From IMG/VR virus record IMGVR_UViG_3300032236_002285, positions 372,001 to 436,000 of that record: DNA of 64,000 bases; one strand, 5' to 3'. Positions within the stretch are counted from its first letter, which is position 1, and each line of letters opens with the position of its first letter. The notes below the pieces were generated by a model that had not been told where the DNA came from, searched no databases, and saw only the letters and a list, made by a program, of their open reading frames with translations. The position numbers and the translations under genes are program-made. Below are positions 35,369-63,953 of the stretch, in pieces.

Positions 35369-36261
35369 CAAATATATTAGACGGTAAATTAGTATCTAAC
35401 CACATACTTGATGGTGTTAGAGAGAATGTTGATAAACATGTAAATGAATCAAAAGAAAAGTTAGGCTATACAATCGCAAGACCAAGTATGGCTATCGTTC
35501 TTGTTGGTAACAATCCTGCTTCTGAATCATATGTTAAAGGCAAATTAAAAGCTTGTGAGAAAGCCGGTATCAATCATCATCTAATTAGATTTGATGAATC
35601 AATATCTGCTTTTGATTTATTAACAGAAGTTAAGAACTTAAACAAATCTTCTTATGATGGTTTCATTGTTCAACTTCCTTTACCAGAACATATCAAACCA
35701 GAGCCAATTATCAATGAGATAAGTGCTTACAAAGATATTGATGGGTTTCATCCACTTAACTTTGGTAAGATGGCTTTAGGTCAAAAAGCAATGAGACCAG
35801 CAACTGCTTATGGTATTCTAAAGTTGTTAGAGTATTATCAACTTGAAACAAAAGGTAAACATGTGGTTGTTATTGGTCGTTCAAATATTGTCGGTAAACC
35901 TATTTCTATTATGCTTGGTAATGACTTTAACATCGGACGAGCTACTGTTACCTCATGTGATATTAACACTCCCAAATCGCTTCTAATTGAAGAATGTCAA
36001 AAAGCAGATATCGTTATTGTAGCTGTTGGTAAGCCTTGTTTAGTAACGGCTGATATGATTAAAGAAGGTGCTGTTGTGATTGATGTTGGTATTAATAAAT
36101 TAGAATCAGGTAAGTTAGTTGGTGATTGTGACTTTGGCGCGATTGCTGAGAAAGCAAGTTGGGTTACTCCGGTACCAGGCGGTGTTGGACCAATGACTAT
36201 ATCTGGTTTGATTCTAAATACTTATGAAGCTTGGAAAATGAAAAACTTTATCAATGAATAA
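35350..36261 (+). CDS. folD: Methylenetetrahydrofolate dehydrogenase/cyclohydrolase
   Basis: VQLPLP, KDIDGFHP, VVIGRSNIVGKP, VIDVGIN, TPVPGGVGPMT. Confidence 0.95.
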   Translation: METTGVANILDGKLVSNHILDGVRENVDKHVNESKEKLGYTIARPSMAIVLVGNNPASESYVKGKLKACEKAGINHHLIRFDESISAFDLLTEVKNLNKSSYDGFIVQLPLPEHIKPEPIINEISAYKDIDGFHPLNFGKMALGQKAMRPATAYGILKLLEYYQLETKGKHVVVIGRSNIVGKPISIMLGNDFNIGRATVTSCDINTPKSLLIEECQKADIVIVAVGKPCLVTADMIKEGAVVIDVGINKLESGKLVGDCDFGAIAEKASWVTPVPGGVGPMTISGLILNTYEAWKMKNFINE

Positions 36262-36499
36262 AGTAATGTGTGTTAGTAATAAGGGTTGGGAACCTCTTCC
36301 GATAACAATCGGTAAGATTTATGATGTTATTAGGTTAGAGAATATACCATTCTCACCACATAGGTATGATGATCCAAGTGGTCCTTTTTATTTAATCAAG
36401 TGTGACAATAAAGAATTAAAACATATTGATGCTAATAGATTTCGTGAGTTAACATTAGATGAGAAAAGAGAATTAAAACTTGAAGATTTGGGAATATGA
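36254..36499 (+). CDS. C-tagged small beta-rich protein
   Basis: TIGKIYDV..YLIKCD..; ends KRELKLEDLGI. Confidence 0.75.
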   Translation: MNKVMCVSNKGWEPLPITIGKIYDVIRLENIPFSPHRYDDPSGPFYLIKCDNKELKHIDANRFRELTLDEKRELKLEDLGI

Positions 36500-36825
36500 T
36501 GCTAAATTGTAGCAGTGAAGAGTCTAAACAAGTGTGTCAAATTATTAATGAATTTGACAAACATAGAGAAAATTATATAAAAGTTTTTAATGTTGAGTTA
36601 ACAAAAGGTAAAGTTTCTAATAGAATACATATCGGTGCACCATTAAGACAAGTAGAAGTTAATTGTTTTAAAGTAAGACATTCAAGTGAATTTGCTTACA
36701 ATAAAGTTTCAACTGGTACACGATATATCTATGAAGGTGATATATTATACACAGAGATTTATAAATGGTATAATAGACATCTACGAGACAATAAATTAGA
36801 AGAATTATTTAATGGAATTTTATAA
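36496..36825 (+). CDS. C-tagged hypothetical protein
   Basis: Ends LRDNKLEELFNGIL. Confidence 0.7.
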   Translation: MMLNCSSEESKQVCQIINEFDKHRENYIKVFNVELTKGKVSNRIHIGAPLRQVEVNCFKVRHSSEFAYNKVSTGTRYIYEGDILYTEIYKWYNRHLRDNKLEELFNGIL

Positions 36826-37105
36826 CTTATTTAAGTTAGTATTTTCAATTGTAATTTATATTATATTATCACCAATCATTATTCCTATTTTATTAATCAA
36901 TGAAGTAAGATGGAATAAAGGTGTTTGTAGAAAGTGTAACTCTGATAGATATGATTTAGATTTCAGACCAGATAAGTTTATTAACCATCACTATGTTTGT
37001 AAGAAGTGTGGATATAGATTCTTATCATCAAGACATAGAATTCAACCGAGTAATAATCAATTAAAAACTCTGATAAGAGAAAATAAGATAAATAAAATAT
37101 TATAA
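36812..37105 (+). CDS. C-tagged membrane-anchored Zn-ribbon protein
   Basis: TM helix, CRKC..CKKC; ends IRENKINKIL. Confidence 0.7.
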   Translation: MEFYNLFKLVFSIVIYIILSPIIIPILLINEVRWNKGVCRKCNSDRYDLDFRPDKFINHHYVCKKCGYRFLSSRHRIQPSNNQLKTLIRENKINKIL

Positions 37106-37106
37106 A

Positions 37107-37370
37107 ATGATTTACCCATCAAGAATAAAAGGTCAGGAATATCCTCTTAGTAAAGGGGATATTGTTGTTTGTATAACTGAGAATTTTGGTGAGTTTACTT
37201 TTGGTAAAAAATATACTTTATACTCTGACTTTGATGGTAATACTTTACCAATTACATCAGATTTAGGTAATCAACCATTACCTTGTTACTACGCACCAAC
37301 TGGATATTATTTTCTACCTCTTCATATCTGGAGAGAATTAAAAATAAACAAAGTATTAGAAAATGAGTAA
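37107..37370 (+). CDS. C-tagged small beta-rich protein
   Basis: GDIVVCI..FTFGKKY; ends WRELKINKVLENE. Confidence 0.7.
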   Translation: MIYPSRIKGQEYPLSKGDIVVCITENFGEFTFGKKYTLYSDFDGNTLPITSDLGNQPLPCYYAPTGYYFLPLHIWRELKINKVLENE

Positions 37371-37542
37371 AGTGACAAAAGAAGAACTTGAAAGATATAA
37401 AAAAATCTTAGCAAATGAAATATCAGCTTTTTTAAAAGAATGTCCAATTTGTAAACAAAAGTTCAAAGATTTTTTAGATATCAAAATCATTTGCACTAAT
37501 TGTGATAGAGAAGAGAAACTAAACAAAGTATTAGAAAAATGA
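37363..37542 (+). CDS. C-tagged 59-aa Zn-finger protein (absent from the ORF track)
   Basis: MSKVTKEELERYKKILANEISAFLKECPICKQKFKDFLDIKIICTNCDREEKLNKVLEK; fills the gap and overlaps both neighbours. Confidence 0.75.
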   Translation: MSKVTKEELERYKKILANEISAFLKECPICKQKFKDFLDIKIICTNCDREEKLNKVLEK

Positions 37543-37763
37543 TAAAAGTAGGAGATAGAGTTAGAAACATCAGAGTAGAAGTATATAAAGATGAACCTAT
37601 AATTGTGATTGATAAATCTTGGAGAGATAGATATCATATTAAATACCTAAATGTTTATACGGTTCAGAATACAAATATGTTATCTTGGGTTGATGAAGGT
37701 GATATAACTTTAGATATAGAATATTATAGAAATCTTAAATTAGAAAAATTATTAAATGAATAA
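37539..37763 (+). CDS. C-tagged small beta-rich protein
   Basis: MIKVGDRV; ends YRNLKLEKLLNE. Confidence 0.7.
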   Translation: MIKVGDRVRNIRVEVYKDEPIIVIDKSWRDRYHIKYLNVYTVQNTNMLSWVDEGDITLDIEYYRNLKLEKLLNE

Positions 37764-38757
37764 TATAAACGATTTTATTAAAACCTTATCAATTAAAGAT
37801 AAGAAGACGCTTTCACAGAAAGGTCTTAAACTTGTAGAAGAAGTAGGTGAGCTAGCAAGAGTTATTTTACCTTATGATTCTGCTCACGGAACTAATCATA
37901 GATTTATTGACAGAGAAGCAATACTTGAAGAAGTAGTTGATGTTTATCTAACAAACATTTCAATTGCTCACTCATTAGGATTCACTGATGAGGAGTTTAA
38001 TGATATGTTGAGTAAGAAGTCAGAGAAGTGGTCTCAGTTACAAGCAAGTGAGGAAAAGGCTGAGTTCCCTCTACCTTTTGAAATTCATGTAACAATTGAA
38101 TCACCTAGTTCTATTGATAAATTCAAACAATCTTGTTCTTTAATTGAAGTTAAACCGATTGTAATTGATTTAGAGATTAATGATGGCTCTATTATTAAAG
38201 ATGTTATGACATCTTCTAAACACTTTGGTGATAACAGAACAGCTTATGAAGAATCAAAAAGAATCTGTAGAGAGTTAGAACTACAAGGTTTTAGAGTTTT
38301 GAGAAATAAAATAGAAAGTGTGCCTTGGCATCCAGCCGCTCCGGTTATTTCAACTGGTAAAGAGATTCCAAATGGTTGTTACTTTGAGGCACACATTGGT
38401 GTTGTTATTAAACCTGAAGAAAAAGATAAATTAAGTGACTTTGTTAAATATCTTGTGAAAACATCTTGCCTATTTAAGTCTGAATACTTATCAAAAAATA
38501 CAATTCCATTGTCAGGAACAGCCAAACTATCACAAAATTTCTTTAAGAAGTCTAAAGATGGTAATGAGTTTATCAATATGTTAACTTATAGAAGTAATAA
38601 ATGTGGTTCTGATAACTTCAAACTAGAAGTTGAGAGTATTAAAAATAGCTTACAAGAAGAAGGATTTGAATTTGAAAAAGTTGAAGTTGAATACGCTGTG
38701 TATGATACAAATGTAACACACGACGCAAAATGGATTTTAGGATATGAAGTCGCTTGA
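37756..38757 (+). CDS. MazG-like pyrophosphohydrolase domain fused to an unknown domain
   Basis: KLVEEVGELA..EEVVDV; C-terminal part has FEIHVT and YFEAHI motifs. Confidence 0.7.
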   Translation: MNNINDFIKTLSIKDKKTLSQKGLKLVEEVGELARVILPYDSAHGTNHRFIDREAILEEVVDVYLTNISIAHSLGFTDEEFNDMLSKKSEKWSQLQASEEKAEFPLPFEIHVTIESPSSIDKFKQSCSLIEVKPIVIDLEINDGSIIKDVMTSSKHFGDNRTAYEESKRICRELELQGFRVLRNKIESVPWHPAAPVISTGKEIPNGCYFEAHIGVVIKPEEKDKLSDFVKYLVKTSCLFKSEYLSKNTIPLSGTAKLSQNFFKKSKDGNEFINMLTYRSNKCGSDNFKLEVESIKNSLQEEGFEFEKVEVEYAVYDTNVTHDAKWILGYEVA

Positions 38758-39133
38758 TATTAGAACTATACAAAATTGGGTAAATCAAACACAAGTTGTT
38801 TGGTTACCTGACTTTGCTGAGATATTAGATATATCTTTTGATGAATGGGGTAGTAATTTAAACATACTATATCAGTTTGACTATCAGTTAGCCGGTACCA
38901 ATCAAAAAATGTTTAACATTTGGATAATGGATTCTAAAAACATATGTCCACCACCAGGTGACTTTTATAAATTCTTTGGAACAGTTGAAAAAAGATTTTC
39001 AGAAGTAAATTTGGCTAATGCTAATAACGGTAGAACAATCACGGTTGATACAGTAACAAAGTGTTATATTTTTATAGAAGAAGTAAAAACAATTGCTGAA
39101 AACAGAGAAGAAAAATTAAACGAAATACTATGA
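38744..39133 (+). CDS. C-tagged hypothetical protein
   Basis: Ends NREEKLNEIL. Confidence 0.7.
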   Translation: MKSLDIRTIQNWVNQTQVVWLPDFAEILDISFDEWGSNLNILYQFDYQLAGTNQKMFNIWIMDSKNICPPPGDFYKFFGTVEKRFSEVNLANANNGRTITVDTVTKCYIFIEEVKTIAENREEKLNEIL

Positions 39134-39474
39134 CAAAAATATATTTAGCCATTCCGTATTCAAGATACGAAGAAAAAAGTTTTAAGTTAGCCAATGAAAT
39201 TGCGGCTCAGTTAATTAACATGGGACACGTTGTTTTCTCACCAATCAGTATGTCACATCCGATTGCTGTTCACGGCAATCTAAAAGGTGACTGGGAAACC
39301 TGGAAAAGAATTGATTTTGAATTCATTAAGTGGTGTGATGAGGTAGTAGTTGTAAACTTTGATGAAGAAGCTGTTGCTAATTCAACTGGTGTTCAAGGTG
39401 AATTAGAATTTGCTAAAGAACTTGGTAAAAATATCAGATATTACTATGACAGGCCACGAGTGGAAAATAACTGA
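39130..39474 (+). CDS. DUF1937 / nucleoside 2-deoxyribosyltransferase-like protein
   Basis: KIYLAIPYS, VFSPISMSH, STGVQGELEFAKELGK. Confidence 0.75.
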   Translation: MTKIYLAIPYSRYEEKSFKLANEIAAQLINMGHVVFSPISMSHPIAVHGNLKGDWETWKRIDFEFIKWCDEVVVVNFDEEAVANSTGVQGELEFAKELGKNIRYYYDRPRVENN

Positions 39475-39475
39475 T

Positions 39476-39730
39476 ATGATTGAAAAAGGATTGGTCAGCT
39501 ATGTTAAAGGTGAAAAGGTTGTCTTATTCCGCAGAAAATCAAATGGTTATCCGAAAGGAATCAAAGATGGTGTTGAATACACTATAAGAGGAATCTATGG
39601 TGAAGGTATTGAAGTTGCTTTAAATTCTTCTGATGGTGTGGGTTGGTTACAATCCATAAAAGTCCACAAGACATATATGATACCTAAATATGCCTTGAGA
39701 GATATAAATCTTAAAAAACTTCTTAATTAA
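39476..39730 (+). CDS. C-tagged small beta-rich protein
   Basis: Start moved to just after the upstream stop; ends LRDINLKKLLN. Confidence 0.65.
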   Translation: MIEKGLVSYVKGEKVVLFRRKSNGYPKGIKDGVEYTIRGIYGEGIEVALNSSDGVGWLQSIKVHKTYMIPKYALRDINLKKLLN

Positions 39731-40455
39731 TTTCTTTTTGGTTGCTTACCATCATACCTTTTACCATCTTTAAATCTTGTTGAAGTTCTAACACCAGCAT
39801 CATGTAAAATTCTACTGGTTATCATAATAGTTAAACCTTCCTCTTCAGATATTTCTTTAATGGTTTTACCATTTTCATATTTAGATATTACAGAATTTAT
39901 TTTATCATCTTCAAGTTTTATAGAGTTTGTTAATTTAACCATATCTTTATCTATATTAATATTATTTGATTTAAAAAATCTTGATAGTCTTTGTCTTGAT
40001 ATATTATATTTTTTAGAAATTTCTCTAATTGATATTTTATTATTTAGATAATCATCTAATATAGATTTTGATATAATTCCTGATATATCTACATAATAGT
40101 TTTCAGAGTCATATCCTTTTGAAGTTAGTTGCTGTTTTATTATATCAAGCCTTCTTGGGTTATTAGATATAGTATCACCACCATCACCGCCCGTAGATGT
40201 ATTATATCCATTTTTTATAGAGTCATATTTTAAAATAAATTCTATTTCTTTTTGATTTATTATGTCTATATCCTCTGTCTCAAAAATAATTTCCCATTTT
40301 ATTGAATCAAAGCCATATTTATTTATAGCATTTGTAAGTTTTGTATTATAATATCGTGTACTATAAGAGTGTTTGATTTTTCTACTATCAAAGTCTTTAC
40401 TTTTACCAATATAAACTTTACCATTTGGAAATTCTGCTTTATATATAACAAACAT
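39727..40455 (-). mobile_element. GIY-YIG homing endonuclease with C-terminal HTH repeats
   Basis: VIYK..NGKVYIGKS..R, AINKYG, E, GYNTSTGGDGG; antisense insertion; TAATATATA box 4 nt upstream. Confidence 0.85.
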
Positions 40456-40515
40456 AGATTATATATTAAACAAAGTGAACTCTTAGAACTATAATTAAAA
40501 AAACATAATAAATAG

Positions 40516-41694: not shown

Positions 41695-41695
41695 A

Positions 41696-42205: not shown

Positions 42206-42236
42206 CAGTCAAGGGATGCTATCCTAAGAGGGGTTC

Positions 42237-52423: not shown

Positions 52424-55400
52424 ATGGCTTTACCTGGTTTATTTCCACTTTACCCCGATCCAATACCAATGAAATATCAAGTTTCATTAGGTCTACCGCC
52501 TCTTCCGGTAAGTGAAATAACTAAGTCAATTGGTATAACTTCATCAAGCTCATTTTTAGTTCCTAATATTGAATATCTTCAAAAGTTTATTGAAGGTGAT
52601 TTAGGAATTGCTGATAAGGCAGTAAAAGAAACATTATATAAAAACTTTAATGACCCTATTGCTCAGAATAATGATAAAGTATTCAAAAGCTATGCTAGTC
52701 TAAATCAAATTGACATACCAGATATTAATAAGTATAAAGTAGATGGTAAAATAAAATTCCCTAAAGAAGATGTAACAGCTCCTAATTTAGATGGCATTGG
52801 ATTCAAAGCATTTGAGAAAACCATTATGACTTCTATCTTTGAAACTCAGAAACCATATCTTGAAGTTGCTAAATTAGTTATTGCTAATGTTGCTAAAATA
52901 GAAGACATAACCGCAAGAGTCATGCCTTTATTGGGTGTTCCTCTTAAAACTAAATCGCTAAAACCAACAGGTAATAGTGGTGCGGGTGATAGACCTAAAG
53001 CAATTGGTTATCAAAATGGTGATGAGTTAAAGAAAGCTCTTTCTCAATTACAAACACTAACTAATCAAGGATCAAAGATAAAAATAGATAAAAATGGTAA
53101 TGCTACTCAAAGTATAACACCAACCGGAACAGCAAGCGTTTCGGGTAACGGTGATAATACAAACTGGCAGATACTATCAAGTGTTTATTCAACTGGTAAA
53201 TTCATACCAGGCATAGACTATCAATATACTTATATTGATTTACCAAGCCAAACAAAGAACACACCAGAAACAGCTGACTTAAATTTAGGAGATGATGATC
53301 CATATAGTGGTTATAAACCAGAGAGAATAATATTGGGTATATTTAGATCGGATGGAACGCCATTAGATCCTAATGAATATCTAAAGACTATTGGTTCAAA
53401 TGGCAATAATATAACATATAATGAAACAAATTTCAAAAGAGCTGATTGGGTATTAAAATCACCGAAGTGGCATTTACCACCATATCTTTCAGATACAAGA
53501 TCGGCTATTTACTCTTGGCCGGCATTTGGCTCACCAACATATAAGTGGAAAGGTCCTTTATTATTAACTCAAGATAGTAAGACGAAACCAGCGGATGGTT
53601 GGGAAATAATGAAATATGAAAAAGGAGATAAGAATGTAATTACCGGAGATGACGCTATCGAAGGTGACCCAATAATAACTGGGTTTGATACTAATCAAAT
53701 TAATGAGTATAAGTCTTATTTTACCGATACGGTTAAATATAAAATGAATCAATCTGATGGTTTAGAACAAACAGAAAAAGATCAATATTCTAATGAAATA
53801 ATTAGCAAACTAAATATTCAATCACATCTTCAAAATGTTTACTTATATGGTCAATCAAAGTCATCTGTTTACAAACAAATTAATAATAAACCGGCTTACC
53901 CTGAATCATTAAAAATATCTTTTAAGCCTTTTCAGATATATTCAGCATCGGCTTCTCAAGATGTTAATCTTGCTGCTTATAATAAATCAGTGGGTTTACA
54001 ACCAGGATTTATTTGGATTGATCCAGAATCTGATTATGAAACAAAGATAATAAGAGTTGATCCTACAACTAAAATTGCTTTTGAAGAGGGAAAAGGTCAG
54101 CCTCAAATTTCATCAACAATTAAATCATTTGTTAAAAACAAAGCCAGTTTTAGTATATCTAATGGTCAAAACTTTAATATTGATATTCAAAAGAACGGCT
54201 TAGTAACGGAATCATTTACAAATGTTAATCAGTATGTTCTTGAAAATTGGAATTATAATTCAGATACTAATTTACCACCAGAAAATAGATTTGAGAATAC
54301 TAACTTTTATAACATCTCTATTTGGTCAACAACACCTACAAAAGACTATGTTAATAAATCAGGAACAATAGAATTAAATCCTGACTCCTACTATCGTGAG
54401 TTAGTTAGAGAAAATGATAAATGGCTATATAAATCATATATCTATGATAGCAATGGTGATAAATCTTATGTCGTGATATCAGATGGTGATATACTACTTA
54501 ATGATAATATGAAAACTAGAGTTAGAATTCAAAATGGTTATATTATAAGATGGTATTATGCTTATAATAGAGTATTTAATGCTACAAACCTACCCGCATT
54601 TGGAAAAGGAAGAAACTTAGTATTAAACTACACAAACGATTTGGATTCAAATTCTAACTTAATCATAAACACAACAGATACTGATATACCTTTATATCAA
54701 TTAAAAGTCGAAAATAGTGATTTTCCTTATGGTAAAATTATAGACCCATCAAAAATAACTAACGACAACTTAATTAAAGACCAATTATTCTCAAAAGGTA
54801 AGTATGGTCATGGTGATGCTGAAAATCCACAAGAGATAGAAGTTATACAAAGATATATGCTAACTGATTTAGACACAGAGTCTTATTATATCATAGAGGG
54901 AGTTTTAACAGAAAAAAATACACAAACTGACACGGTACCTTCAACAGGCGGCGCTGCGTCCGGTGGTGGTTATTATAGACTACCACATGCTTTAGGTGCG
55001 ACTAAAGTTTTCTTATCTTTATTAGTAGATATCTTTTCAAAGTTAATACCTCAAATAACTAAGATGATAGCTCTTTTCAAAAATCCAGGAAGTTTTATAA
55101 TAGACATTATACAAAGAAAGTTAGGTGAAGGTTTTTCTATTTTTTCTAAACAATCATTTGATACATTTGAAAAGGCAAAATCTATTTCAAATAAGAAAGT
55201 TGATAGCACCAATAGAGTATCCGATAAGGTTAATAGGCTTAAAGATACATTTAAAAACTCACCATTATCTAATGTGGTTTATGTTGATAAAAAAGGTAAT
55301 TACAAATTTTTACTTGATGGTGTAGCTATGTTACCATTTGAGATGTTTGGTTTAAGTATTCCTTTTGGTGCTGATTTGAACTTTTCTAATTTACCTGATG

Positions 55401-56719
55401 TGCCTATAAAATTAATAACAGATGTTAAAACAGCAAAAGCTAAAAATATTCAAGACTTCTTAAAACCTAAGTTAAAAGAATTTAACGGACCAGGTAGTAC
55501 CGGTGTTGCGCCAACAGGAGCAGGAAAGCTAGCACCTGGATTAAATATCTCAGATATAAAGTCAATTAAAGATGATCCTATTTATAATACTAATGTAAAT
55601 AATGGTAAAACCAATCCTAATGATTATCAGATTATTGATGTTAAATATTCAACTGGTTCTTATATAAATGGTGTGAATTATAATTATATTTATATTAATC
55701 AAGATGAAGATAAAATATTAACTGATGCTAATAATTTAGTAAATACTCCTAATGAAGCGGTCGATTTACCTAAGGCTCAAAAAACTTTACAGGATTTGAA
55801 TGATGCTCAAAAGAAAGACCCTACAAATGAGGCAATAAAAGATATGATTAATAAACTTAAAAATAAGTTAGCAAATCTTTCTGATAATACTCAACCAATT
55901 ATTAAAATGTTATTAGGCTTTGTTACAATACCTGTAAAAATAATTGGTGGTATAATAAGTTGGTTAATGGACTTTTTCAAAAGTCTAACAAATCCACTAA
56001 CACTACCTGCTAAAATAGCAGAATTATTATCTTTTAGTTGGCTCATGAAGTTTTTCACACCTATTGGTATGATGGAACTTATAGGATTTAAGTTTGAACC
56101 AGCTAAACTAGCAGAGTGGCTTGCCTTGGTTAAGGTACCAAGTGTAAAACCACCTAATATATCACCTAAAATACCAGATGGTTTTGATTTACCAAGTGCT
56201 CATTATTACAAGGATGCAACACCAAAAGGTAGATTTTTAATACCAGATGATTTTGATATAGCTGACTTAAATATGGTAATTGCTGCTCCGTTTATTCCTA
56301 AATTACCAACCTATACAGCTAGACAATTCAGAGAGAATCCAACAAGACCTATTAAGTTAATATTGCCTTTTCTTTGTTTCTTTGAAAAAATAATAAATGG
56401 TATAATTGATTTTATTTGGTCAACATTAGGTATAGAAGCTTTAATACCAGCACCTCATATAAAATTATGTAGTAATTCAGTAAATCCTAGTATAAGTGAT
56501 GCTGTTAAGATAGCTGATGACTTGAAGAAAACGGGAACTGAACCGGTTGCTACAGGTGGTACCTTTAGTAATGGTAGTAGCACTAATATACCAACAGATG
56601 CTGGGTTTTTATATGATATAACTCTTGATAATGGGACCGTAGTAAAAGGTTTAAACTATGAAGAAATGCAAAAGTATATTAAAGACCATGAGAATATTGG
56701 TTATGATTTTAAATTCTAA
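52424..56719 (+). CDS. Large (1431 aa) putative late, probably structural protein
   Basis: AAATATATA upstream; internal duplication YSTGKFIPGIDYQYTYI / YSTGSYINGVNYNYIYI; hydrophobic helical segments. Confidence 0.7.
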   Translation: MALPGLFPLYPDPIPMKYQVSLGLPPLPVSEITKSIGITSSSSFLVPNIEYLQKFIEGDLGIADKAVKETLYKNFNDPIAQNNDKVFKSYASLNQIDIPDINKYKVDGKIKFPKEDVTAPNLDGIGFKAFEKTIMTSIFETQKPYLEVAKLVIANVAKIEDITARVMPLLGVPLKTKSLKPTGNSGAGDRPKAIGYQNGDELKKALSQLQTLTNQGSKIKIDKNGNATQSITPTGTASVSGNGDNTNWQILSSVYSTGKFIPGIDYQYTYIDLPSQTKNTPETADLNLGDDDPYSGYKPERIILGIFRSDGTPLDPNEYLKTIGSNGNNITYNETNFKRADWVLKSPKWHLPPYLSDTRSAIYSWPAFGSPTYKWKGPLLLTQDSKTKPADGWEIMKYEKGDKNVITGDDAIEGDPIITGFDTNQINEYKSYFTDTVKYKMNQSDGLEQTEKDQYSNEIISKLNIQSHLQNVYLYGQSKSSVYKQINNKPAYPESLKISFKPFQIYSASASQDVNLAAYNKSVGLQPGFIWIDPESDYETKIIRVDPTTKIAFEEGKGQPQISSTIKSFVKNKASFSISNGQNFNIDIQKNGLVTESFTNVNQYVLENWNYNSDTNLPPENRFENTNFYNISIWSTTPTKDYVNKSGTIELNPDSYYRELVRENDKWLYKSYIYDSNGDKSYVVISDGDILLNDNMKTRVRIQNGYIIRWYYAYNRVFNATNLPAFGKGRNLVLNYTNDLDSNSNLIINTTDTDIPLYQLKVENSDFPYGKIIDPSKITNDNLIKDQLFSKGKYGHGDAENPQEIEVIQRYMLTDLDTESYYIIEGVLTEKNTQTDTVPSTGGAASGGGYYRLPHALGATKVFLSLLVDIFSKLIPQITKMIALFKNPGSFIIDIIQRKLGEGFSIFSKQSFDTFEKAKSISNKKVDSTNRVSDKVNRLKDTFKNSPLSNVVYVDKKGNYKFLLDGVAMLPFEMFGLSIPFGADLNFSNLPDVPIKLITDVKTAKAKNIQDFLKPKLKEFNGPGSTGVAPTGAGKLAPGLNISDIKSIKDDPIYNTNVNNGKTNPNDYQIIDVKYSTGSYINGVNYNYIYINQDEDKILTDANNLVNTPNEAVDLPKAQKTLQDLNDAQKKDPTNEAIKDMINKLKNKLANLSDNTQPIIKMLLGFVTIPVKIIGGIISWLMDFFKSLTNPLTLPAKIAELLSFSWLMKFFTPIGMMELIGFKFEPAKLAEWLALVKVPSVKPPNISPKIPDGFDLPSAHYYKDATPKGRFLIPDDFDIADLNMVIAAPFIPKLPTYTARQFRENPTRPIKLILPFLCFFEKIINGIIDFIWSTLGIEALIPAPHIKLCSNSVNPSISDAVKIADDLKKTGTEPVATGGTFSNGSSTNIPTDAGFLYDITLDNGTVVKGLNYEEMQKYIKDHENIGYDFKF

Positions 56720-56999: not shown

Positions 57000-57179
57000 T
57001 TAAAATAAAAAAAAGGCTTTGCTTGGTTGAACTAATTTAGTTCTCTCAAACAGAGCCTTATTTATTTTAGCAACAAGATATTTTCTTGCTAGTTCCGTCT
57101 TAGGACAAGATGGCTTTTCCATCTTACACTTAATAAGGTACCAATTTGCTAAAAGAATCGAATCTATGTCTTGTTTCAT
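57000..57179 (-). CDS. 59-aa hypothetical protein (absent from the ORF track)
   Basis: MKQDIDSILLANWYLIKCK...; fills the gap; TTATATATA box upstream. Confidence 0.5.
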   Translation of the reverse strand: MKQDIDSILLANWYLIKCKMEKPSCPKTELARKYLVAKINKALFERTKLVQPSKAFFLF

Positions 57180-57237
57180 TTAATATTTAAACTTTTAATG
57201 AGATTATATATAAAAAAATAAAATCAATTTTCTTATT

Positions 57238-58323: not shown

Positions 58324-58340
58324 AAAAAATATATATACAC

Positions 58341-58682
58341 ATGATTTCAGAACTAAAAGATGACGAAATATTAGATTTCTTGATGACTTCCGACTTCGAA
58401 GATGATTATTCTCCAACAGAGCTAAAATATCTATTGGTTAAATGGAGATATTTTTACAGACTTCAAAACGGTGCGTTAGAAAGAAGGTCAGTTGATTTAG
58501 AAGGTAAAATAAGAATTTTAGAAGAAAAAGTTAATGCTCAAGAAAGAGAGAAAACAAATCTTCAAATTCAATTAGCTGATAGTCAAAACACCATCGATAG
58601 TATGAAAAACAGAAATCTTACCTTCAAGGAAAGATGGTCTGGAAAAATTATTCTAAAAGAAGATGAAAATACAAGAGTTTAA
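58341..58682 (+). CDS. Coiled-coil hypothetical protein
   Basis: Heptad pattern; LTFKERWSGKI near the C-terminus. Confidence 0.7.
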   Translation: MISELKDDEILDFLMTSDFEDDYSPTELKYLLVKWRYFYRLQNGALERRSVDLEGKIRILEEKVNAQEREKTNLQIQLADSQNTIDSMKNRNLTFKERWSGKIILKEDENTRV

Positions 58683-59787
58683 AAAACTAGAAGAGAAAAT
58701 AACGGGTCAAGACTTCAATAGAGGTTATAAAAACATTAATACTTTAATGCTTATACTTTCTATTTTTGGACACTTTGCCTCTATTTTCTTGGCTTATTTT
58801 ATGGTTTCTAAAGTTTTATCAGGTGCTATGACTGATAACCCTGTTGCTGTGTTCATAGCTTCAATCGTAATCCTTTCTGGATTAGAGTTATTAAAAAGAG
58901 ATATCTTTGATAAATTCAGTATTCAATACTTGAAATTCAAATCATTTACAAAAGAAGTTTTACCGCTTTTTATTTTAAGTGTTGCTATTATAAGTATATC
59001 TTTCTACTCATCTATATCAGGTGCTAAAGAGTTTTCATCTAAAGCCGCAGTGATTGAGCAAAACAAAAAAGAAGTGGTTAGTCAGTTTGCTGATAGTTTA
59101 ACTAAAATTTATGATGCTAAAGTATCTGAAATTGATAGTGAAATTAAATCAGATAAAGATAAAATTGATGCTAAAGATAAAGAACAAACAGATCTTGAAG
59201 CTATTCAACCACCTACTCGTTCTCAAAGATCTAGAATTAAAGACTTAAAAGATGAGAAGACTATTTTAAGAAATGAGATTACTAAATTTGAAAGTGATCA
59301 AAATAATATTAAAGCTGAGCTTGCTACTAAGTTAAAAGAACATGAAACTGAAGTAAGTAAAGATGCTGATAGTAAAAAGAAAGATAACAGCTCTAACTCT
59401 TTAGCATTTGTTTTAATATCAACTTTGATTGAATTGGTTATCTTAGCTGGTGTTTATTTCAATGAGTATTATAAATTCAGATCGTATAGAGAATTTAGAA
59501 ATAAAATTGAAAAAGATCCTAACTATCAAAAATGGATGCTTTACGACCAAATGTTACACATTGTTTACACAGAAGATTCTAAAATGAATCAAAAACTACC
59601 AGCTAATAAAGGTATTGCTGATATGTGTAAAGTAAATGATATCATTGTTATGCCTAAAGATATCACAGATTTCTTAAAAGTTATGAACGGTCTTGGTATT
59701 ATTAAAACATCTGGTTCAACTAGGTATATAAATAAGCAAAGAGATTTAGCTTTTGAGATTTTAAGAAGACATTTTAATATTCAATAA
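58663..59787 (+). CDS. Membrane protein with a long coiled coil
   Basis: Three N-terminal TM helices, a coiled coil, then a fourth TM helix. Confidence 0.7.
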   Translation: MKIQEFKKLEEKITGQDFNRGYKNINTLMLILSIFGHFASIFLAYFMVSKVLSGAMTDNPVAVFIASIVILSGLELLKRDIFDKFSIQYLKFKSFTKEVLPLFILSVAIISISFYSSISGAKEFSSKAAVIEQNKKEVVSQFADSLTKIYDAKVSEIDSEIKSDKDKIDAKDKEQTDLEAIQPPTRSQRSRIKDLKDEKTILRNEITKFESDQNNIKAELATKLKEHETEVSKDADSKKKDNSSNSLAFVLISTLIELVILAGVYFNEYYKFRSYREFRNKIEKDPNYQKWMLYDQMLHIVYTEDSKMNQKLPANKGIADMCKVNDIIVMPKDITDFLKVMNGLGIIKTSGSTRYINKQRDLAFEILRRHFNIQ

Positions 59788-59788
59788 T

Positions 59789-60595
59789 ATGTATATAGAT
59801 TCTGTAATGAATTACACGGGAAGTAAATTCAAGCTACTTGAACAATTACTTCCCGTTTTTGATTATACAAAACCTTACTTTGTAGATGTATTTGCCGGTG
59901 GTGGCTCAATCTACACAAATGTCGTTGATAAGTATCAAAAGGTATTAGTCAATGATGTTATATCTGATTTAGTCGGAATACATCAAAATCTTCTATTAGG
60001 AGACGAAATTATTCAAACAACTAAAGAACTATGCCCGGGTAAAAATAACCCAACCAAGTTCGCCGAATTGAGAAATTCATACAATTTAGAACCAACACCT
60101 GCTAAACTTTGGGCTTTGATGTTATCATCAACTAATAATATGATGAGGTTCAATCAAAAGTTCAAGTATAATCAAACTTATGGTGATAGAGGTTGGAATG
60201 CTAACACTGATAAGAAGGTAGAAACATTTACTAATCATATCAGACAATACAAAGAAAGGATTAAATTCATTTCTAAACCATTTGATCAGATAGAGATATC
60301 TTCAAATAAAATTATGTTTTATTGTGATCCGCCATACAAAAACTCAAATGCTGGTTATAACGCATATTGGAAAAATGAAGATGAGGATAAGTTATATGAA
60401 TATCTAAAAAAAATAGACAACCATGGTTCTTCATTTATGGTATCTGGAGTTTTAAAACATAATAATATTGAATCTGAGTTGTTAAAAAAACTGATATCAG
60501 ATGGATATAAGTATAAAGAGTTAAGATTTGATTATAATAAGGTCTCAAGAGTTGGTAAAAAAGAAACAACGGAGATTATAGTTATGAACTATTAG
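59789..60595 (+). CDS. Dam-like N6-adenine DNA methyltransferase (T4 Dam-like)
   Basis: NYTGSKFKLL, FVDVFAGGGS, RFNQKF.YN, DPPY, EIIVMNY. Confidence 0.9.
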   Translation: MYIDSVMNYTGSKFKLLEQLLPVFDYTKPYFVDVFAGGGSIYTNVVDKYQKVLVNDVISDLVGIHQNLLLGDEIIQTTKELCPGKNNPTKFAELRNSYNLEPTPAKLWALMLSSTNNMMRFNQKFKYNQTYGDRGWNANTDKKVETFTNHIRQYKERIKFISKPFDQIEISSNKIMFYCDPPYKNSNAGYNAYWKNEDEDKLYEYLKKIDNHGSSFMVSGVLKHNNIESELLKKLISDGYKYKELRFDYNKVSRVGKKETTEIIVMNY

Positions 60596-60683
60596 ATATA
60601 TTTAAATATATTGATCCTCCCTATTAAAAATCCAAAGAAAGCGCACTTTTTAATATATAAACCATAAAAAATAAAAATAAATT

Positions 60684-60899
60684 ATGGAATACTTAGACAA
60701 ATACGATAAATTGGTTAAGTTACTTACAGAAGATTTTGAGATTGAAGGTAAGAATTTTAATCTAAAAGATGACTTTGAAAAGTTCTTCGTAAAAGGCAAC
60801 AAAACTGCAGGCACTCGTATTAGAAAAGCAATGCAAGAGTTAAAGAAATTATCTCAAGAAGTTAGAAATGATGTTCAAGAGTATAAAACTAAAATCTAA
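60684..60899 (+). CDS. Histone H1-like (Hc1 family) nucleoid protein
   Basis: DFEKFFVKGNKTAGTRIRKAMQELKKLSQEVRNDVQ; TAATATATA at 60651-60659. Confidence 0.8.
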   Translation: MEYLDKYDKLVKLLTEDFEIEGKNFNLKDDFEKFFVKGNKTAGTRIRKAMQELKKLSQEVRNDVQEYKTKI

Positions 60900-60911
60900 T
60901 GAAAAGATATT

Positions 60912-60938
60912 AAAACCCATCTCAAAAAGATGGGTTTT
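60912..60938 (+). terminator. Rho-independent terminator
   Basis: aaaacccatct-caaaa-agatgggtttt. Confidence 0.8.
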
Positions 60939-60976
60939 GCTTTTTAATATATAATTATACAAATAAGATTTATAAT

Positions 60977-61561
60977 ATGAAAAAGTTCAGTAACATATCA
61001 AACGTAAAGGTTTCAGAAGAACCTAAAATAGAAGTTAAACAATTAAACGAAGAAGAAATGTTTAAGGTTAAGGTAATGAACCTTATGGAACAACTTCTTT
61101 CTGTAAGAACTTATGGCCCGGTTGATAGATATCTAAGAGCCGGTAACATTAAAGTTGTTGGTAAAGAAATGTTTTTAGAAGCTTTAATGGACTTACTAAA
61201 AGATAAATCTTCAAAAGATGAAAAGAAAATATTAGAATCACTTAAAGCTGAAGTTTCCAACTGGGAAGTGATTGATTCTAAAATTGATGAAGTAAATCAA
61301 AAAATTGCTGAGAATCAAGAAAAGGATAAAATGATTCCTCATAGAAACAAGCTCAAATCTCTTTATAATAACTACGGTCAAGACGAAGAAATGTTTATGA
61401 ACATGGTTCAAGAAGCTTGTAACAAAATTACAAATAGCGAAACAGCTTATTTAAGAGGTTTAACAGCCGAATATATGGCTAATGAAGGTAAATACCCAAA
61501 AGAAGTATTTGCTAAAGTATCTGAATTATTTAAAGAAAAATCTAAACAATTAGGCTCATAA
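60977..61561 (+). CDS. Putative late helical protein with a weak N-tag (MKKFS)
   Basis: TAATATATA at 60945-60953. Confidence 0.7.
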   Translation: MKKFSNISNVKVSEEPKIEVKQLNEEEMFKVKVMNLMEQLLSVRTYGPVDRYLRAGNIKVVGKEMFLEALMDLLKDKSSKDEKKILESLKAEVSNWEVIDSKIDEVNQKIAENQEKDKMIPHRNKLKSLYNNYGQDEEMFMNMVQEACNKITNSETAYLRGLTAEYMANEGKYPKEVFAKVSELFKEKSKQLGS

Positions 61562-61568
61562 TTAATTA

Positions 61569-61823
61569 ATGACTGATCTAACAGACAATCAACTTGAAAA
61601 GCTTTATGCTATGTCTGAAATCCACTACAAATGGTTCCAGATATATTCTCCTGAGACTAAATATGAAGATGTTTTAAAGCTTAATCATATAAAGATGTTA
61701 AGTATAATGGAAGGTTGTTCTGATTGTTCAGAAGATATGTTAGATTTTATTTTTGATGCTATTATTAGAGATTATAAAGAAATGTTAAATGATTATTCAA
61801 TTGGCTTAGACGATATTATCTAA
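61569..61823 (+). CDS. Hypothetical protein
   Basis: ORF within the operon. Confidence 0.6.
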   Translation: MTDLTDNQLEKLYAMSEIHYKWFQIYSPETKYEDVLKLNHIKMLSIMEGCSDCSEDMLDFIFDAIIRDYKEMLNDYSIGLDDII

Positions 61824-62186
61824 GTTCTTTCTTCTGCGATACTTTTGTTTTGACTTTTCCACTTCATCTTCGTTGTTTCCGTACATATAGTTATAATAAT
61901 AAAGAAGTGTTGCGTCTTGTAAGTTTTCTTTAATACAATCATCACAAATAGCAATCACGAATTGATCACCATCATGTGTTGAACCATAACCAGCGTCAAT
62001 GATATGAATTATACCATTATCAATCATTTCATTATTGACATTAACCAAACTACCATCTTCTCTTCTTTCTCTTTTCCAAATAACATCCTCTTCACTTTGA
62101 GGGGGTGAATCTTCAGTTGAGATTTTAGAACCCATTCTTGGTGTATAAGGAATTACATTATTTTTCTTACAACAGATGCAATACAT
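61806..62186 (-). CDS. C-tagged Zn-binding protein
   Basis: CICC...AGYGSTHD..ICDDC; ends RRRKNLDNIV. Confidence 0.7.
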   Translation of the reverse strand: MYCICCKKNNVIPYTPRMGSKISTEDSPPQSEEDVIWKRERREDGSLVNVNNEMIDNGIIHIIDAGYGSTHDGDQFVIAICDDCIKENLQDATLLYYYNYMYGNNEDEVEKSKQKYRRRKNLDNIV

Positions 62187-62335
62187 TAGTTAAATATCTT
62201 TTTAATTTTTTTCATTCTTTTCTTTTCTCTACTTAATGGTCTGTTATAAGTTATAATAGAAGATATTCTTGTTTCTAAATTAGGTAGAAACCTTATTTTA
62301 GCACCTGGCTTTAACTCAAAGAATTCTTTTTTCAT
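62186..62335 (-). CDS. C-tagged 49-aa protein (absent from the ORF track)
   Basis: MKKEFFELKPGAKIRFLPNLETRISSIITYNRPLSREKKRMKKIKKIFN; coupled to both neighbours. Confidence 0.7.
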   Translation of the reverse strand: MKKEFFELKPGAKIRFLPNLETRISSIITYNRPLSREKKRMKKIKKIFN

Positions 62336-62517
62336 ATATCAAATATGTTTTTAATTTTTTTCATTCTTCTGCTTTGCTTAGAAGGAAACTTCATTGTCAT
62401 AAAAGATGGATAAATAATTCTATCGTAGTTTTTAATACTATCTTGAATTTTACCCTTCTGTTCTTTTCTAAGTGATGCTAGTTCTTCTAACATCTTCTTC
62501 ATTTGTTCTTCGTTCAT
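62332..62517 (-). CDS. C-tagged small protein
   Basis: Ends RRMKKIKNIFDI. Confidence 0.7.
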   Translation of the reverse strand: MNEEQMKKMLEELASLRKEQKGKIQDSIKNYDRIIYPSFMTMKFPSKQSRRMKKIKNIFDI

Positions 62518-62657
62518 AGATTAAACAAGTTCTTTATTTTCTCTTTTCTTTTTGTTCGTCTTGATGGTAGAATAGTTACTGAATGTGTTAAAGAGGATAT
62601 ACCACCTTGTAATCCACTTGGTAAAGTAAAAACAAAATCAAAATTCTTTATATTCAT
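62514..62657 (-). CDS. C-tagged 47-aa protein (absent from the ORF track)
   Basis: MNIKNFDFVFTLPSGLQGGISSLTHSVTILPSRRTKRKEKIKNLFNL; ATGA overlaps on both sides. Confidence 0.7.
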   Translation of the reverse strand: MNIKNFDFVFTLPSGLQGGISSLTHSVTILPSRRTKRKEKIKNLFNL

Positions 62658-63496
62658 TTCTCTGCTACTTTTCTAAAGTCAGTTAAGATAGTGTTTCTTA
62701 GTTCTCTGAACTCTTCATCTAATTCCTCCCAAGTCCATCTTTTTCTTTTAATCTTATCCCAAATAAAGTTAGCACAAGAAAAATCTGTAATACGACCTGA
62801 CGTTGCTATTTGAGTAGCAAACATAGGAATTCTCAATGAGTGAAAAAGAGATTTAACTCCGGTGTGGTATTCGTCAGTTAGTTCTAATTTCTTTTTGCAC
62901 TTGACCCAGCTATTAGAACTTATATGAGAAGTTGCGTGTCTGAGTTTAGCTAAGTTGATTTTGAAATTATCAAACTTGATAGTTTCTTTTAACTTAGCCC
63001 AATCTGGTGCCCAAATACATTCTAGATTGTTTATACGATGCCATTCTAAATCAGCTTTGAACTTATCAGGAGTGTAAACGTGAATGTTGAATAAACCATT
63101 ACGAATCTCAGTTGATTCAACAGAGTTGTTAGCGATCATAATAATATCCCAATCAGAATCAGAGGTAGCTGTTCCGTATACCTGAGACCCGAAGATGTAC
63201 ACGTTAAAGACCCGACTTGGGTGTATCTTTGATGCTTTAATTATTGTTTCTAATGTTGGTATCATTATCTTATCTATTTTAATATTTCTTACTGCTGATG
63301 GATCTAAACTCTCTAAAATCCCCTCAATACAATCTTGACAAAGAATTGAAACTCCACCATCTAATGTGTGTATAGAAGCACACTTCACAACGTGAGAGTC
63401 ACAACCATCACATATCTTATTATCATCAACAAACATTAGAGATGCTTTAAGTACTTGTGGTCTTTCTGGAAACTTAGATAAGTGTATTTTTCTCAT
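62654..63496 (-). CDS. Pol-beta-type nucleotidyltransferase fused to an N-terminal Zn-finger/tag module
   Basis: YIFGSQVYGTATSDSDWDIIMI; KSLFHSLRI; N-terminal CDGC..CQDC then RNIKIDKI-M. Confidence 0.8.
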   Translation of the reverse strand: MRKIHLSKFPERPQVLKASLMFVDDNKICDGCDSHVVKCASIHTLDGGVSILCQDCIEGILESLDPSAVRNIKIDKIMIPTLETIIKASKIHPSRVFNVYIFGSQVYGTATSDSDWDIIMIANNSVESTEIRNGLFNIHVYTPDKFKADLEWHRINNLECIWAPDWAKLKETIKFDNFKINLAKLRHATSHISSNSWVKCKKKLELTDEYHTGVKSLFHSLRIPMFATQIATSGRITDFSCANFIWDKIKRKRWTWEELDEEFRELRNTILTDFRKVAEK

Positions 63497-63714
63497 ATTC
63501 CTAATTCTTTTAACTTGTCGTCTCTTAATTTACTAAGCAATTCATACTTACTACGAATGAATCTTGTTTCACCAATACAATTACCATTATCATCTTCTAA
63601 ATCAAGACCTCTAATGTCATCATCACCTGTAATAGTGAACTGATGTCCTTTCTTATATACTTTACCGTTAAATTCAAAGTCCTCTAAAAAAACTACTCTG
63701 TCTCCAATTCTCAT
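63493..63714 (-). CDS. C-tagged small beta-rich protein
   Basis: MRIGDRVVF; ends LRDDKLKELGI. Confidence 0.75.
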   Translation of the reverse strand: MRIGDRVVFLEDFEFNGKVYKKGHQFTITGDDDIRGLDLEDDNGNCIGETRFIRSKYELLSKLRDDKLKELGI

Positions 63715-63953
63715 TTTAATATTTTATTTATTTGTTGTTCTCTAAATTCTTCTAACGTCATAAAATGTTTAGCATCCATCTTCCTAAACTTACCATCATC
63801 ACACTTGATAACATATGATGGTGCTACAGGTTTTAATGTAACTGGATCATAAATAACAGGAGTCAATTCACACTCATAAAAGCTACCTGGCTTTACATAG
63901 TAAGCCATTTCATCAACTGGTGATATAGTATCTTTAAGATAGAGTGTAGCCAT
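63711..63953 (-). CDS. C-tagged small beta-rich protein
   Basis: YVIKCDDG..HFMTLEEFREQQINKILK; TATCTTTG at 63958-63965 (-). Confidence 0.75.
   Translation of the reverse strand: MATLYLKDTISPVDEMAYYVKPGSFYECELTPVIYDPVTLKPVAPSYVIKCDDGKFRKMDAKHFMTLEEFREQQINKILK

What the first reader, a model, noticed from the sequence alone, without database searches (positions are those of the whole stretch)
36254..63953. Family of tiny SH3/KOW-like beta proteins carrying the C-tag
Seen: 21233, 36254, 37107, 37539, 39476, 63493 and 63711 are 73-87 aa and share elements such as GD-x-V, G-x-x-Y and YxIKCD before the tag helix. 36254 and 63711 align well (YLIKCDNKELKHIDANRF / YVIKCDDGKFRKMDAKHF). Inference: a diversified adaptor family with a variable binding barrel and a constant docking helix, conceptually like substrate adaptors for a protease.
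Basis: inference. Interest (0 to 1): 0.6.

Follow-up and report, generated by a model that had tools for sequence, protein, structure and literature searches.

The report
Phage mini-barrels sharing a C-terminal tag
Seven tiny proteins of a 476-kb freshwater huge phage are mostly SH3/KOW-like mini-barrels from several separate families, and each ends in the same short helical tag that about 15% of the phage's genes carry, which looks like a so-far undescribed docking or degradation signal.

Summary
The seven ORFs exist as described (73-87 aa) and all end in the tag. They are not one family. With the tag removed, only 36254 and 63711 are clear homologs, and 21233 (DUF2158) and 37539 are probable remote homologs. 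The SH3/KOW-like fold is supported for five of the seven: AF2 models of 63493 and 36254 match SH3 domains, the 37539 profile hits ribosomal uL24, and 21233 is DUF2158. 37107 and 39476 remain untested.

The tag is the main feature. Its motif is R-[DE]-x-K-[LI]-x-x-[ILV]-[LG]-x. It lies within 9 residues of the stop in 98 ORFs, about 15% of genes and 35% of 80-120-aa genes; reversed sequences give 1 hit. It is conserved as protein, not DNA, and is kept in orthologs. It is attached to barrels, zinc ribbons, membrane-anchored proteins and larger unknown proteins. It is confined to one clade of freshwater huge phages and is absent from Lak-B1 and from more distant relatives.

That clade also encodes a ClpC-type unfoldase without the Clp_N domain, carrying a clade-specific acidic N-terminal peptide. 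ClpP sits among tagged genes.

Best reading: a modular docking or degron helix for a common partner, with the phage Clp machine as top candidate. The partner is unproven, and the single complex prediction gave no verdict.

The parts
21233..21463 (+). 76-aa DUF2158 (SH3-like) protein with the C-tag; tag helix about 21410-21460
   Evidence: Pfam DUF2158 33.3 bits, cut-off 22.3. phrog_3261 hit. Aligns with the 37539 family over 68 columns, probability 90%. Ortholog in G001 keeps the tag.
36254..36499 (+). 81-aa mini-barrel with the C-tag (tag 36455-36496); paralog of 63711
   Evidence: AF2 pLDDT 81, five strands then helix 68-79. Best PDB matches are SH3 domains, Z 5-6. Family defined by jackhmmer.
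37107..37370 (+). 87-aa protein with the C-tag (tag 37320-37367); fold not determined
   Evidence: 97 homologs, all of those aligned keeping W-R-E-L-K-[IL]-N-K-[VIL]-L. No Pfam, PHROG or PDB profile hit.
37539..37763 (+). 74-aa KOW/SH3-like protein with the C-tag (tag 37716-37760)
   Evidence: Profile of 30 homologs hits archaeal ribosomal uL24 at E 4e-4, and YdhK. The tag arginine is invariant, and ILN and LGI endings interchange among homologs.
39476..39730 (+). 84-aa protein with the C-tag (tag 39686-39727); fold not determined
   Evidence: Ortholog with tag in G001. One IMG/VR relative. No family hit.
63493..63714 (-). 73-aa SH3-like barrel with the C-tag (tag 63496-63537)
   Evidence: AF2 pLDDT 95.2, six strands then helix 60-70. 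SH3, RecD2 and Pif1 SH3-like domains match at Z 6-7.3. 94 homologs keep the tag, R64 invariant.
63711..63953 (-). 80-aa mini-barrel with the C-tag (tag 63714-63755); paralog of 36254
36496..36825 (+). 109-aa tagged protein of unknown fold
   Evidence: PWM 18.6. Absent together with the next gene in relatives' contigs.
36812..37105 (+). 97-aa tagged protein with an N-terminal membrane anchor and a zinc ribbon
37363..37542 (+). 59-aa tagged zinc-ribbon protein
38744..39133 (+). 129-aa tagged protein, no Pfam hit
25086..25943 (+). 285-aa tagged protein, no Pfam or PHROG hit
   Evidence: Ortholog in G001 keeps the tail.
25943..26155 (+). 70-aa tagged protein
17253..17603 (+). 116-aa tagged protein
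19043..19387 (+). 114-aa tagged protein
28921..29226 (+). 101-aa tagged protein

Best explanation
The seven ORFs are real small proteins. They come from at least five separate sequence families, and most are SH3/KOW-like mini-barrels.

What unites them is a modular C-terminal amphipathic helix of about 12-15 residues. Its pattern is hydrophobic at -4, often aromatic at -1, then R0, D/E1, K3, L/I4, I/L7, L/G8, followed by 0-2 residues and the stop. The phage appends this helix to about 98 otherwise unrelated and mostly uncharacterised proteins.

Shown here:
- The tag is specific to its position at the C-terminus.
- It is selected at protein level.
- It is conserved in orthologs.
- It is restricted to one clade.
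- It is independent of the fold it is attached to.

Inferred: the conserved residues R0, K3, L4, I7 and L8 fall on one face of the helix, which would dock all tagged proteins onto one common partner.

The best candidate partner is the phage's own ClpC-type unfoldase, working with ClpP. This unfoldase lacks the Clp_N domain. In exactly the tag-bearing clade it carries a short N-terminal peptide, hydrophobic-[KR]-x-A-[LI] followed by an acidic run, that would complement the basic and hydrophobic tag face.

The tag would then act in one of two ways.
For: Position and abundance:
- 98 tagged ORFs against 1 hit in reversed controls.
- 93 of about 635 genes are tagged: 35% of 80-120-aa genes and 2% of genes of 250 aa or more.

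Protein-level selection:
- Arg is encoded by AGA 69, CGT 20 and CGA 7. Leu uses TTA and CTN. Synonymous use tracks the genome-wide pattern.
- Information content peaks at positions 0, 1, 3, 4, 7 and 8, a helical period.
- AF2 places a helix on the tag.

Conservation:
- The G001 counterparts of 24 tagged G000 proteins scored as tagged in 19 cases.
- In four families the tag is as conserved as the body or more so. In the three large ones (A2, A4, A6) the tag arginine is an invariant column.

Modularity:
- The tag occurs on DUF2158, SH3-like barrels, zinc ribbons and membrane-anchored proteins.
- The only region that aligns between families is the tag.

Clade restriction:
- 70 profile matches in G000 and 67 in LR745206, against 0 in Lak-B1.
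- Matches occur in relatives forming one well-supported ClpC clade and in none outside it.

Clp link:
- ClpP scores 185 bits and lies inside a tagged gene array.
- The ClpC-like protein has a VGF ClpP-docking loop and no Clp_N domain.
- Its N-terminal acidic motif is present in all tag-bearing contigs and absent in the nearest tag-free outgroups.
- Contigs found independently through a tag DNA pattern, where ClpC-like is present at 72% identity or more, all carry the motif. Both near-complete ones have it.
- Precedent: SPO1 Gp53 is a phage adaptor-like protein for ClpCP (PMC6873191).
Against: - No partner was demonstrated. The one complex prediction (ClpC-like plus 63493) gave no verdict.
- The tag and ClpC-motif co-occurrence maps to a single clade, so it counts as one evolutionary event and cannot be separated from shared ancestry.
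- G001 is tag-rich and 94% complete, yet no ClpP was found in it by tblastn.
- The tag-free phage G015 has both ClpP and ClpC-like.
- Several tag-pattern contigs lack ClpC-like, but all are fragments.
- AF2 confidence is high on the helix, which could mean that it packs on its own domain.
Confidence: 0.45

Rival explanations
1. The tag is a virion or capsid-targeting (cargo-loading) peptide. Tagged proteins would be packed into the very large head and delivered with the DNA. Comparable systems are encapsulin cargo-loading peptides and the basic C-terminal coat-binding helix of scaffolding proteins.
For: - The tag is a C-terminal short peptide on diverse small proteins.
- It has a basic i,i+3 pair on an amphipathic helix.
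- Tagged proteins are phage-specific unknowns, with no Pfam hit for 30 of the 31 larger ones scanned in three batches.
Against: - Tagged genes lie in arrays with metabolic and accessory genes at the far end of the genome from the terminase. None lies in the first 50 kb.
- About 100 different cargo species would be unprecedented.
- Seven have membrane anchors.
- No capsid gene was identified for a test.
Confidence: 0.12
2. The tag docks on a host hub such as the host ClpX, another chaperone or protease, or RNA polymerase, or it is an in-plane membrane or other localisation helix. The phage Clp genes would then be unrelated to it.
For: - The helix is amphipathic with flanking basic residues.
- ClpP is missing from tag-rich G001, and Clp genes are present in tag-free phages.
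Against: - An invariant Arg and an acidic residue at +1 are unusual for membrane-binding helices.
- Only three aliphatic residues are present.
- Restriction to a narrow clade fits a co-evolving phage partner better.
- The host is unknown, so nothing could be tested.
Confidence: 0.2
3. There is no common partner. The helix would be a structural cap, or the last conserved remnant of one ancient and hugely expanded paralog family.
For: - Tagged genes form tandem arrays typical of paralog expansion.
- Some pairs are true paralogs.
- pLDDT on the helix is high.
Against: - The bodies have different architectures: zinc ribbons, a membrane anchor, barrels and a 581-aa protein.
- The barrel of 63493 matches a PHROG profile over residues 3-53 only, short of the tag.
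- R0 and K3 are solvent-type residues, yet they are the most conserved columns.
Confidence: 0.13
4. The signal acts at nucleic-acid or translation level. It could be a recombination or boundary sequence for cassette shuffling, or a nascent-peptide or mRNA element that aids stop-start coupling to the next gene.
For: - 33 of 98 tagged genes overlap the next start by ATGA, against 8 of 102 untagged small genes.
- Relatives gain or lose whole tagged genes exactly at these boundaries.
Against: - Synonymous codons vary freely, and both Arg codon families are used.
- Many tags precede TAA with a spacer.
- The distance to the stop varies from 0 to 8 residues.
- Conservation has a helical periodicity.
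Confidence: 0.05

Closest known systems
SspB-type adaptor docking peptide (C-terminal XB motif binding the ClpX N-domain) and adaptor proteins of ClpC (MecA; phage SPO1 Gp53, PMC6873191)
   Same: - A short peptide at the extreme C-terminus.
- A hydrophobic plus basic character.
- It could tether a variable binding domain to an AAA+ unfoldase.
- Phages are known to supply adaptor-like proteins for ClpCP.
   Different: - Here one motif sits on about 98 different proteins of one phage.
- The candidate unfoldase is phage-encoded and lacks the N-domain that known adaptors bind.
- There is no sequence similarity to XB or MecA.
- Binding is untested.
C-terminal degrons (ssrA tag; MuA-type basic C-terminal ClpX signal)
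   Same: - Extreme C-terminal position.
- A basic plus aliphatic composition.
- A Clp protease is encoded in the same genome.
   Different: - The tag is genetically encoded on about 15% of genes rather than added or present on a few substrates.
- It is helical and longer.
- Degradation has not been shown.
Encapsulin cargo-loading peptides; T4 capsid-targeting sequence
   Same: One short constant peptide that directs many unrelated proteins to one protein shell.
   Different: - No sequence similarity.
- The T4 signal is N-terminal and is cleaved off.
- Tagged genes are not near packaging genes.
Viral F-box/PRANC and BC-box proteins
   Same: A variable binder plus a constant C-terminal helical docking motif, expanded as many copies in a large viral genome.
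   Different: - Those belong to the eukaryotic ubiquitin system.
- Those motifs are longer domains.
- No homology.
SH3-like/KOW small barrels (uL24, Spt5/NusG KOW, DUF2158/YodC, SH3-like domains of Pif1 and RecD2)
   Same: The fold of the bodies of five of the seven proteins.
   Different: - No conserved functional residues were identified.
- The C-terminal tag is not part of those families.

Membership tests
SH3-like / KOW small beta-barrel fold | Five or six short strands forming a small barrel; structural match to SH3 or KOW domains | tested here: met
   - 63493: pLDDT 95, with SH3, RecD2 and Pif1 domains at Z 6-7.3, rmsd 2.4-3.1 Å over 59-68 residues.
- 36254, standing also for 63711: pLDDT 81, with SH3 domains at Z 5-6.
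- All Z values are below 8, so this shows topology, not homology.
SH3-like / KOW small beta-barrel fold | Sequence-profile similarity to a KOW or SH3-like family | tested here: met
   - 37539 profile against archaeal uL24: E 4e-4, 1e-3 and 3e-3.
- 21233: Pfam DUF2158, above the cut-off.
SH3-like / KOW small beta-barrel fold | The same for 37107 and 39476 | tested here: inconclusive
   No Pfam, PHROG, PDB-profile or atlas lead.
One homologous protein family of the seven | Detectable similarity of the bodies once the tag is removed | tested here: not met
   - BLASTP finds only 4 pairs among 98 proteins.
- jackhmmer links only 36254 and 63711.
- hhalign aligns only the tag.
- The exception is 21233 with 37539.
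Clp adaptor with a docking peptide, or Clp degron | A cognate unfoldase and protease is available | tested here: met
   ClpP, and a ClpC-like protein with GYVG pore loops and a VGF loop, are both in G000.
Clp adaptor with a docking peptide, or Clp degron | Physical binding of the tag to the unfoldase, or tag-dependent degradation | tested here: inconclusive
   The complex prediction returned no verdict. Biochemistry is needed.
Clp adaptor with a docking peptide, or Clp degron | Co-occurrence of the tag and the unfoldase across genomes | tested here: inconclusive
   - All eight near-complete tag-rich genomes have the N-domain-less ClpC-like protein; its N-terminal acidic motif was read and found in the seven whose N-terminus was examined (not LR745206).
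- This is a single clade.
- ClpC-like proteins also occur in tag-free phages.
DNA-level repeat (boundary or recombination element) | Conservation at nucleotide rather than amino-acid level | tested here: not met
   Codon choice within the tag follows genome-wide synonymous usage, and both Arg and both Leu codon families are used.
Encapsulin-like cargo-loading peptide | Genes next to the shell gene; peptide binds the shell interior | not tested
   - No capsid gene was identified by Pfam.
- Tagged genes are absent from the 50 kb around the terminase.

The most novel reading that the evidence does not exclude
A clade of freshwater huge phages marks roughly one gene in seven with a genetically encoded C-terminal helical address tag. 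The tag is read by the phage's own remodelled ClpC-ClpP machine, in which the N-domain is replaced by a short acidic capture peptide. This would give the phage a private, programmable proteolysis system. It would either time the removal of its accessory proteins or use dozens of mini-binder domains as adaptors to destroy host targets.
Probability: 0.2. Interest if true: 0.9.

Novelty: new variant of a known kind. Interest (0 to 1): 0.7.

Why it matters
Short constant peptides that route many proteins to one machine are known: degrons, adaptor docking peptides and cargo-loading peptides. None has been described that covers about 15% of a phage proteome; five full-text literature searches found nothing on it.

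If the tag is a docking or degradation signal, it would matter in three ways:
- It gives a handle on about 100 'dark' genes per genome, since one partner would explain them all.
- It offers a natural set of mini-binder domains with a common handle.
- It is a possible example of virus-encoded targeted proteolysis in bacteria.

It is also directly testable with one peptide and a few recombinant proteins.

Tried and rejected
- **Complex prediction:** ClpC-like (710 aa, alignment A5) with 63493 (A2) scored 0.00. The tool's verdict was no answer, so this counts neither for nor against binding.
- **Phyletic profiling for a partner:** I looked for G000 genes shared with tag-rich G001 but absent from tag-free G015. 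This gave 135 candidates, too many to be useful because G015 is too distant.
- **Variant tag in a distant relative:** A de novo search for a different C-terminal motif in G015 found none.
- **Lak megaphage link:** Lak-B1 has no tag and no ClpC-like gene.
- **DNA-level motif:** Rejected on codon usage.
- **Alternative genetic code:** Rejected. Code 11 already gives 90% coverage by ORFs of 100 aa or more, and tags precede all three stop codons.
- **Searches that gave nothing useful:**
  - ESM Atlas look-alikes for 37107 and 39476 returned only unnamed viral clusters.
  - PDB sequence or profile searches for 21233, A2, A3 and A6 found nothing significant.
  - Pfam on the 31 larger tagged proteins scanned in three batches gave only one marginal TacA1-like hit.
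  - PHROGs returned only families of unknown function.
  - A search for other proteins carrying the ClpC N-terminal acidic motif found it to be unique in the genome.
- **RNA evidence:** Only a few 151-185-nt metatranscriptome contigs lie over 37418-38382. This is too little to speak to expression of the small ORFs.


Full report
**Context**

The window is bases 372,001-436,000 of a 476,236-bp virus record. It has about 30% G+C. Its nearest relative in the phage collection is the 635-kb uncultured phage LR745206, and it is only faintly similar to Prevotella Lak megaphages. Near-identical DNA occurs in freshwater and aquatic metagenomes from ten studies. The standard code applies: ORFs of 100 aa or more already cover 90% of the genome, and reading TAG or TGA through adds little.

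The region around the finding mixes accessory metabolic genes with runs of small, tightly packed ORFs. The accessory genes include FolD, PRPP synthetase, an epimerase, a MazG-like protein, a deoxyribosyltransferase-like protein, a glycosyltransferase and a nucleotidyltransferase.

**Observation**

All seven ORFs exist, with lengths of 73-87 aa. Each ends in R-[DE]-x-K-[LI]-x-x-[ILV]-[LG] followed by 1-4 residues.

The shared N-terminal elements are looser than stated:
- G-D-x-V occurs in four of the seven.
- Y-x-I-K-C-D occurs only in 36254 and 63711.

With the tag cut off, the relationships are as follows:
- An all-against-all BLASTP of 98 tagged proteins finds only four related pairs, one of which is 36254/63711.
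- jackhmmer groups 36254 and 63711 with G000 473363, G000 473859 and three G001 proteins, and leaves the other five alone.
- Profile-profile comparison of the 63493, 36254 and 37539 families aligns only the tag.
- 21233 aligns with the 37539 family along its whole length, with probability 90%.

So there are at least five sequence families, not one.

**Fold**

- **63493.** AF2 on 39 sequences gives pLDDT 95.2, with six strands then helix 60-70. Foldseek and VIA return almost only SH3 domains and the SH3-like domains of RecD2 and Pif1, at Z 6-7.3.
- **36254.** AF2 on 13 sequences gives pLDDT 81, with five strands then helix 68-79. The matches are again SH3 domains, at Z 5-6.
- **37539.** The family profile hits archaeal ribosomal protein uL24, a KOW protein, at E 4e-4.
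- **21233.** It is a DUF2158 member above Pfam's cut-off.
- **37107 and 39476.** They stay unassigned.

Because all Z values are below 8, it describes topology and is not evidence of common descent.

**The tag is the larger phenomenon**

*Abundance and position.* A position weight matrix finds 112 matches in ORFs of 40 aa or more across the genome. Of these, 97 lie within 8 residues of the stop (98 within 9, the tagged set used below), and 61 of them within 0-1 residues. Reversed sequences give 1 match. In a greedy gene set of about 635 genes, 93 are tagged. That is 35% of 80-120-aa genes but only 2% of genes of 250 aa or more. Sixty lie in the last 125 kb and none in the first 50 kb, where the terminase sits.

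*Conservation pattern.* Conservation peaks at positions 0, 1, 3, 4, 7 and 8. This pattern puts R0, K3, L/I4, I/L7 and L/G8 on one helical face. AF2 models a helix exactly there.

*Codon usage.* Arg uses AGA 69, CGT 20 and CGA 7. Leu uses TTA and CTN, with Ile/Leu alternation. Overall usage follows genome-wide synonymous usage, so selection acts on the peptide and not on the DNA.

*Orthologs and families.* The G001 counterparts of 24 tagged G000 proteins scored as tagged in 19 cases. In families sampled from metagenomes the tag arginine is invariant. The -ILx and -LGI endings interchange within one family.

*Bodies.* The tag is attached to very different proteins:
- SH3-like barrels.
- Eight proteins with two C-x-x-C pairs.
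- Seven proteins with an N-terminal membrane anchor.
- Proteins of 140-581 aa.

Of the 31 larger tagged proteins scanned in three batches, only one had a Pfam hit, and that hit was marginal. Many untagged neighbours are ordinary enzymes.

**Distribution**

A 15-column tag profile gives these match counts:

| Genome | Matches |
|---|---|
| G000 | 70 |
| LR745206 | 67 |
| Lak-B1 | 0 |

In IMG/VR relatives the tag is present in every sizeable contig of one well-supported clade. It is absent outside that clade, including three complete genomes of 349-380 kb. No substitute C-terminal motif appears in the tag-free relative G015.

**Mechanism**

A constant, position-fixed, one-faced helix on about 100 unrelated proteins is best explained as a docking or targeting peptide for one partner. 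Looking for a partner, I found two candidates:
- **ClpP.** It scores 185 bits and lies inside a tagged gene array just beyond the window end.
- **A 710-aa ClpC-type unfoldase.** It has two AAA+ modules, a UVR-type middle motif, a GYVG pore loop and a VGF ClpP-docking loop, but no Clp_N domain.

Relatives outside the tag clade either keep a full Clp_N domain or have a bare N-terminus. Every member of the tag clade instead has a short N-terminal peptide, hydrophobic-[KR]-x-[AS]-[LI] followed by a run of aspartates. This motif is unique in the genome.

A tag-shaped DNA pattern was used to find contigs independently of ClpC. Where those contigs hold a ClpC-like gene at 72% identity or more, they carry the same peptide, and both near-complete ones have it. 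The acidic and hydrophobic peptide would complement the basic and hydrophobic tag face.

This is suggestive only, for four reasons:
- The co-occurrence is one clade, hence one evolutionary event.
- G001 has tags but no detectable ClpP.
- Tag-free G015 has both Clp genes.
- The single complex prediction returned no verdict.

**Rivals**

The rival readings are listed with their tests in the Rival explanations section:
- A capsid cargo signal.
- A host hub or membrane helix.
- A structural remnant of a single expanded family.
- A translation or recombination signal.

The last is disfavoured by codon usage and by the variable distance to the stop. Even so, tagged genes overlap the next start by ATGA four times more often than untagged small genes. 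Relatives also gain and lose whole tagged genes exactly at these junctions.

**Novelty**

Five full-text searches found no description of the motif or of a proteome-wide C-terminal tag in phages.

I rate the specific 'family' claim as partly right. The underlying tag is a new variant of known short docking and degron signals. It is of high interest because one peptide-binding experiment could assign a common mechanism to about 100 unknown genes per genome.

Noticed in passing
window 36495-37107; 39131-39133: Contigs of related phages join 36495 directly to 37107. They therefore lack the two tagged genes 36496-36825 and 36812-37105 as one 611-nt cassette, cut at the ATGA stop/start overlap. Another relative has 4.4 kb extra exactly at the end of the tagged gene 38744-39133. 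Gene gain and loss happens at tag/stop boundaries.
   Followed up: partly
G000:440754-441512 (minus), 4.8 kb beyond the window end; G000:284643-286775 (plus): The phage encodes ClpP inside a tagged gene array. It also encodes a ClpC-type unfoldase without the Clp_N domain, which carries a clade-specific acidic N-terminal peptide.
   Followed up: yes
whole record G000: Tagged genes are strongly polar along the genome. None lies in the first 50 kb, where the terminase sits at 38.5 kb. Sixty of 93 lie in the last 125 kb, and 28 in the last 26 kb.
   Followed up: partly
G000:87334-89001; 223844-224272; 445982-446194; 466869-467212: A few tag copies lie inside or at the start of ORFs: at residue 245 of a 555-aa protein, at one N-terminus, and in two overlapping 62-aa ORFs with near-identical tag-plus-tail. 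These may be gene fusions or decayed boundaries.
   Followed up: no
window 36254-39730: Near-identical or related DNA occurs only in freshwater and aquatic metagenomes, from 10 studies. This is unlike the gut-associated Lak phages that are its nearest named relatives.
   Followed up: partly
window 52424-56719: A 1431-aa ORF has no Pfam match at E 0.01 or below. It has a 36%-identical homolog in G001.
   Followed up: no
G000:447214-448671; 364935-366518; 358751-359575: Three accessory genes lie beside tagged arrays: a tyrosinase-domain protein, a DUF2201 putative metallopeptidase with a VWA-like domain, and an N6/N4 DNA methylase.
   Followed up: no
window 63493-63714: The barrel of 63493 aligns at about 30% identity over 47 residues with the SH3-like domain of Bacteroides and Deferribacter Pif1 helicases. 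It also matches phrog_26571 over residues 3-53, short of the tag.
   Followed up: partly
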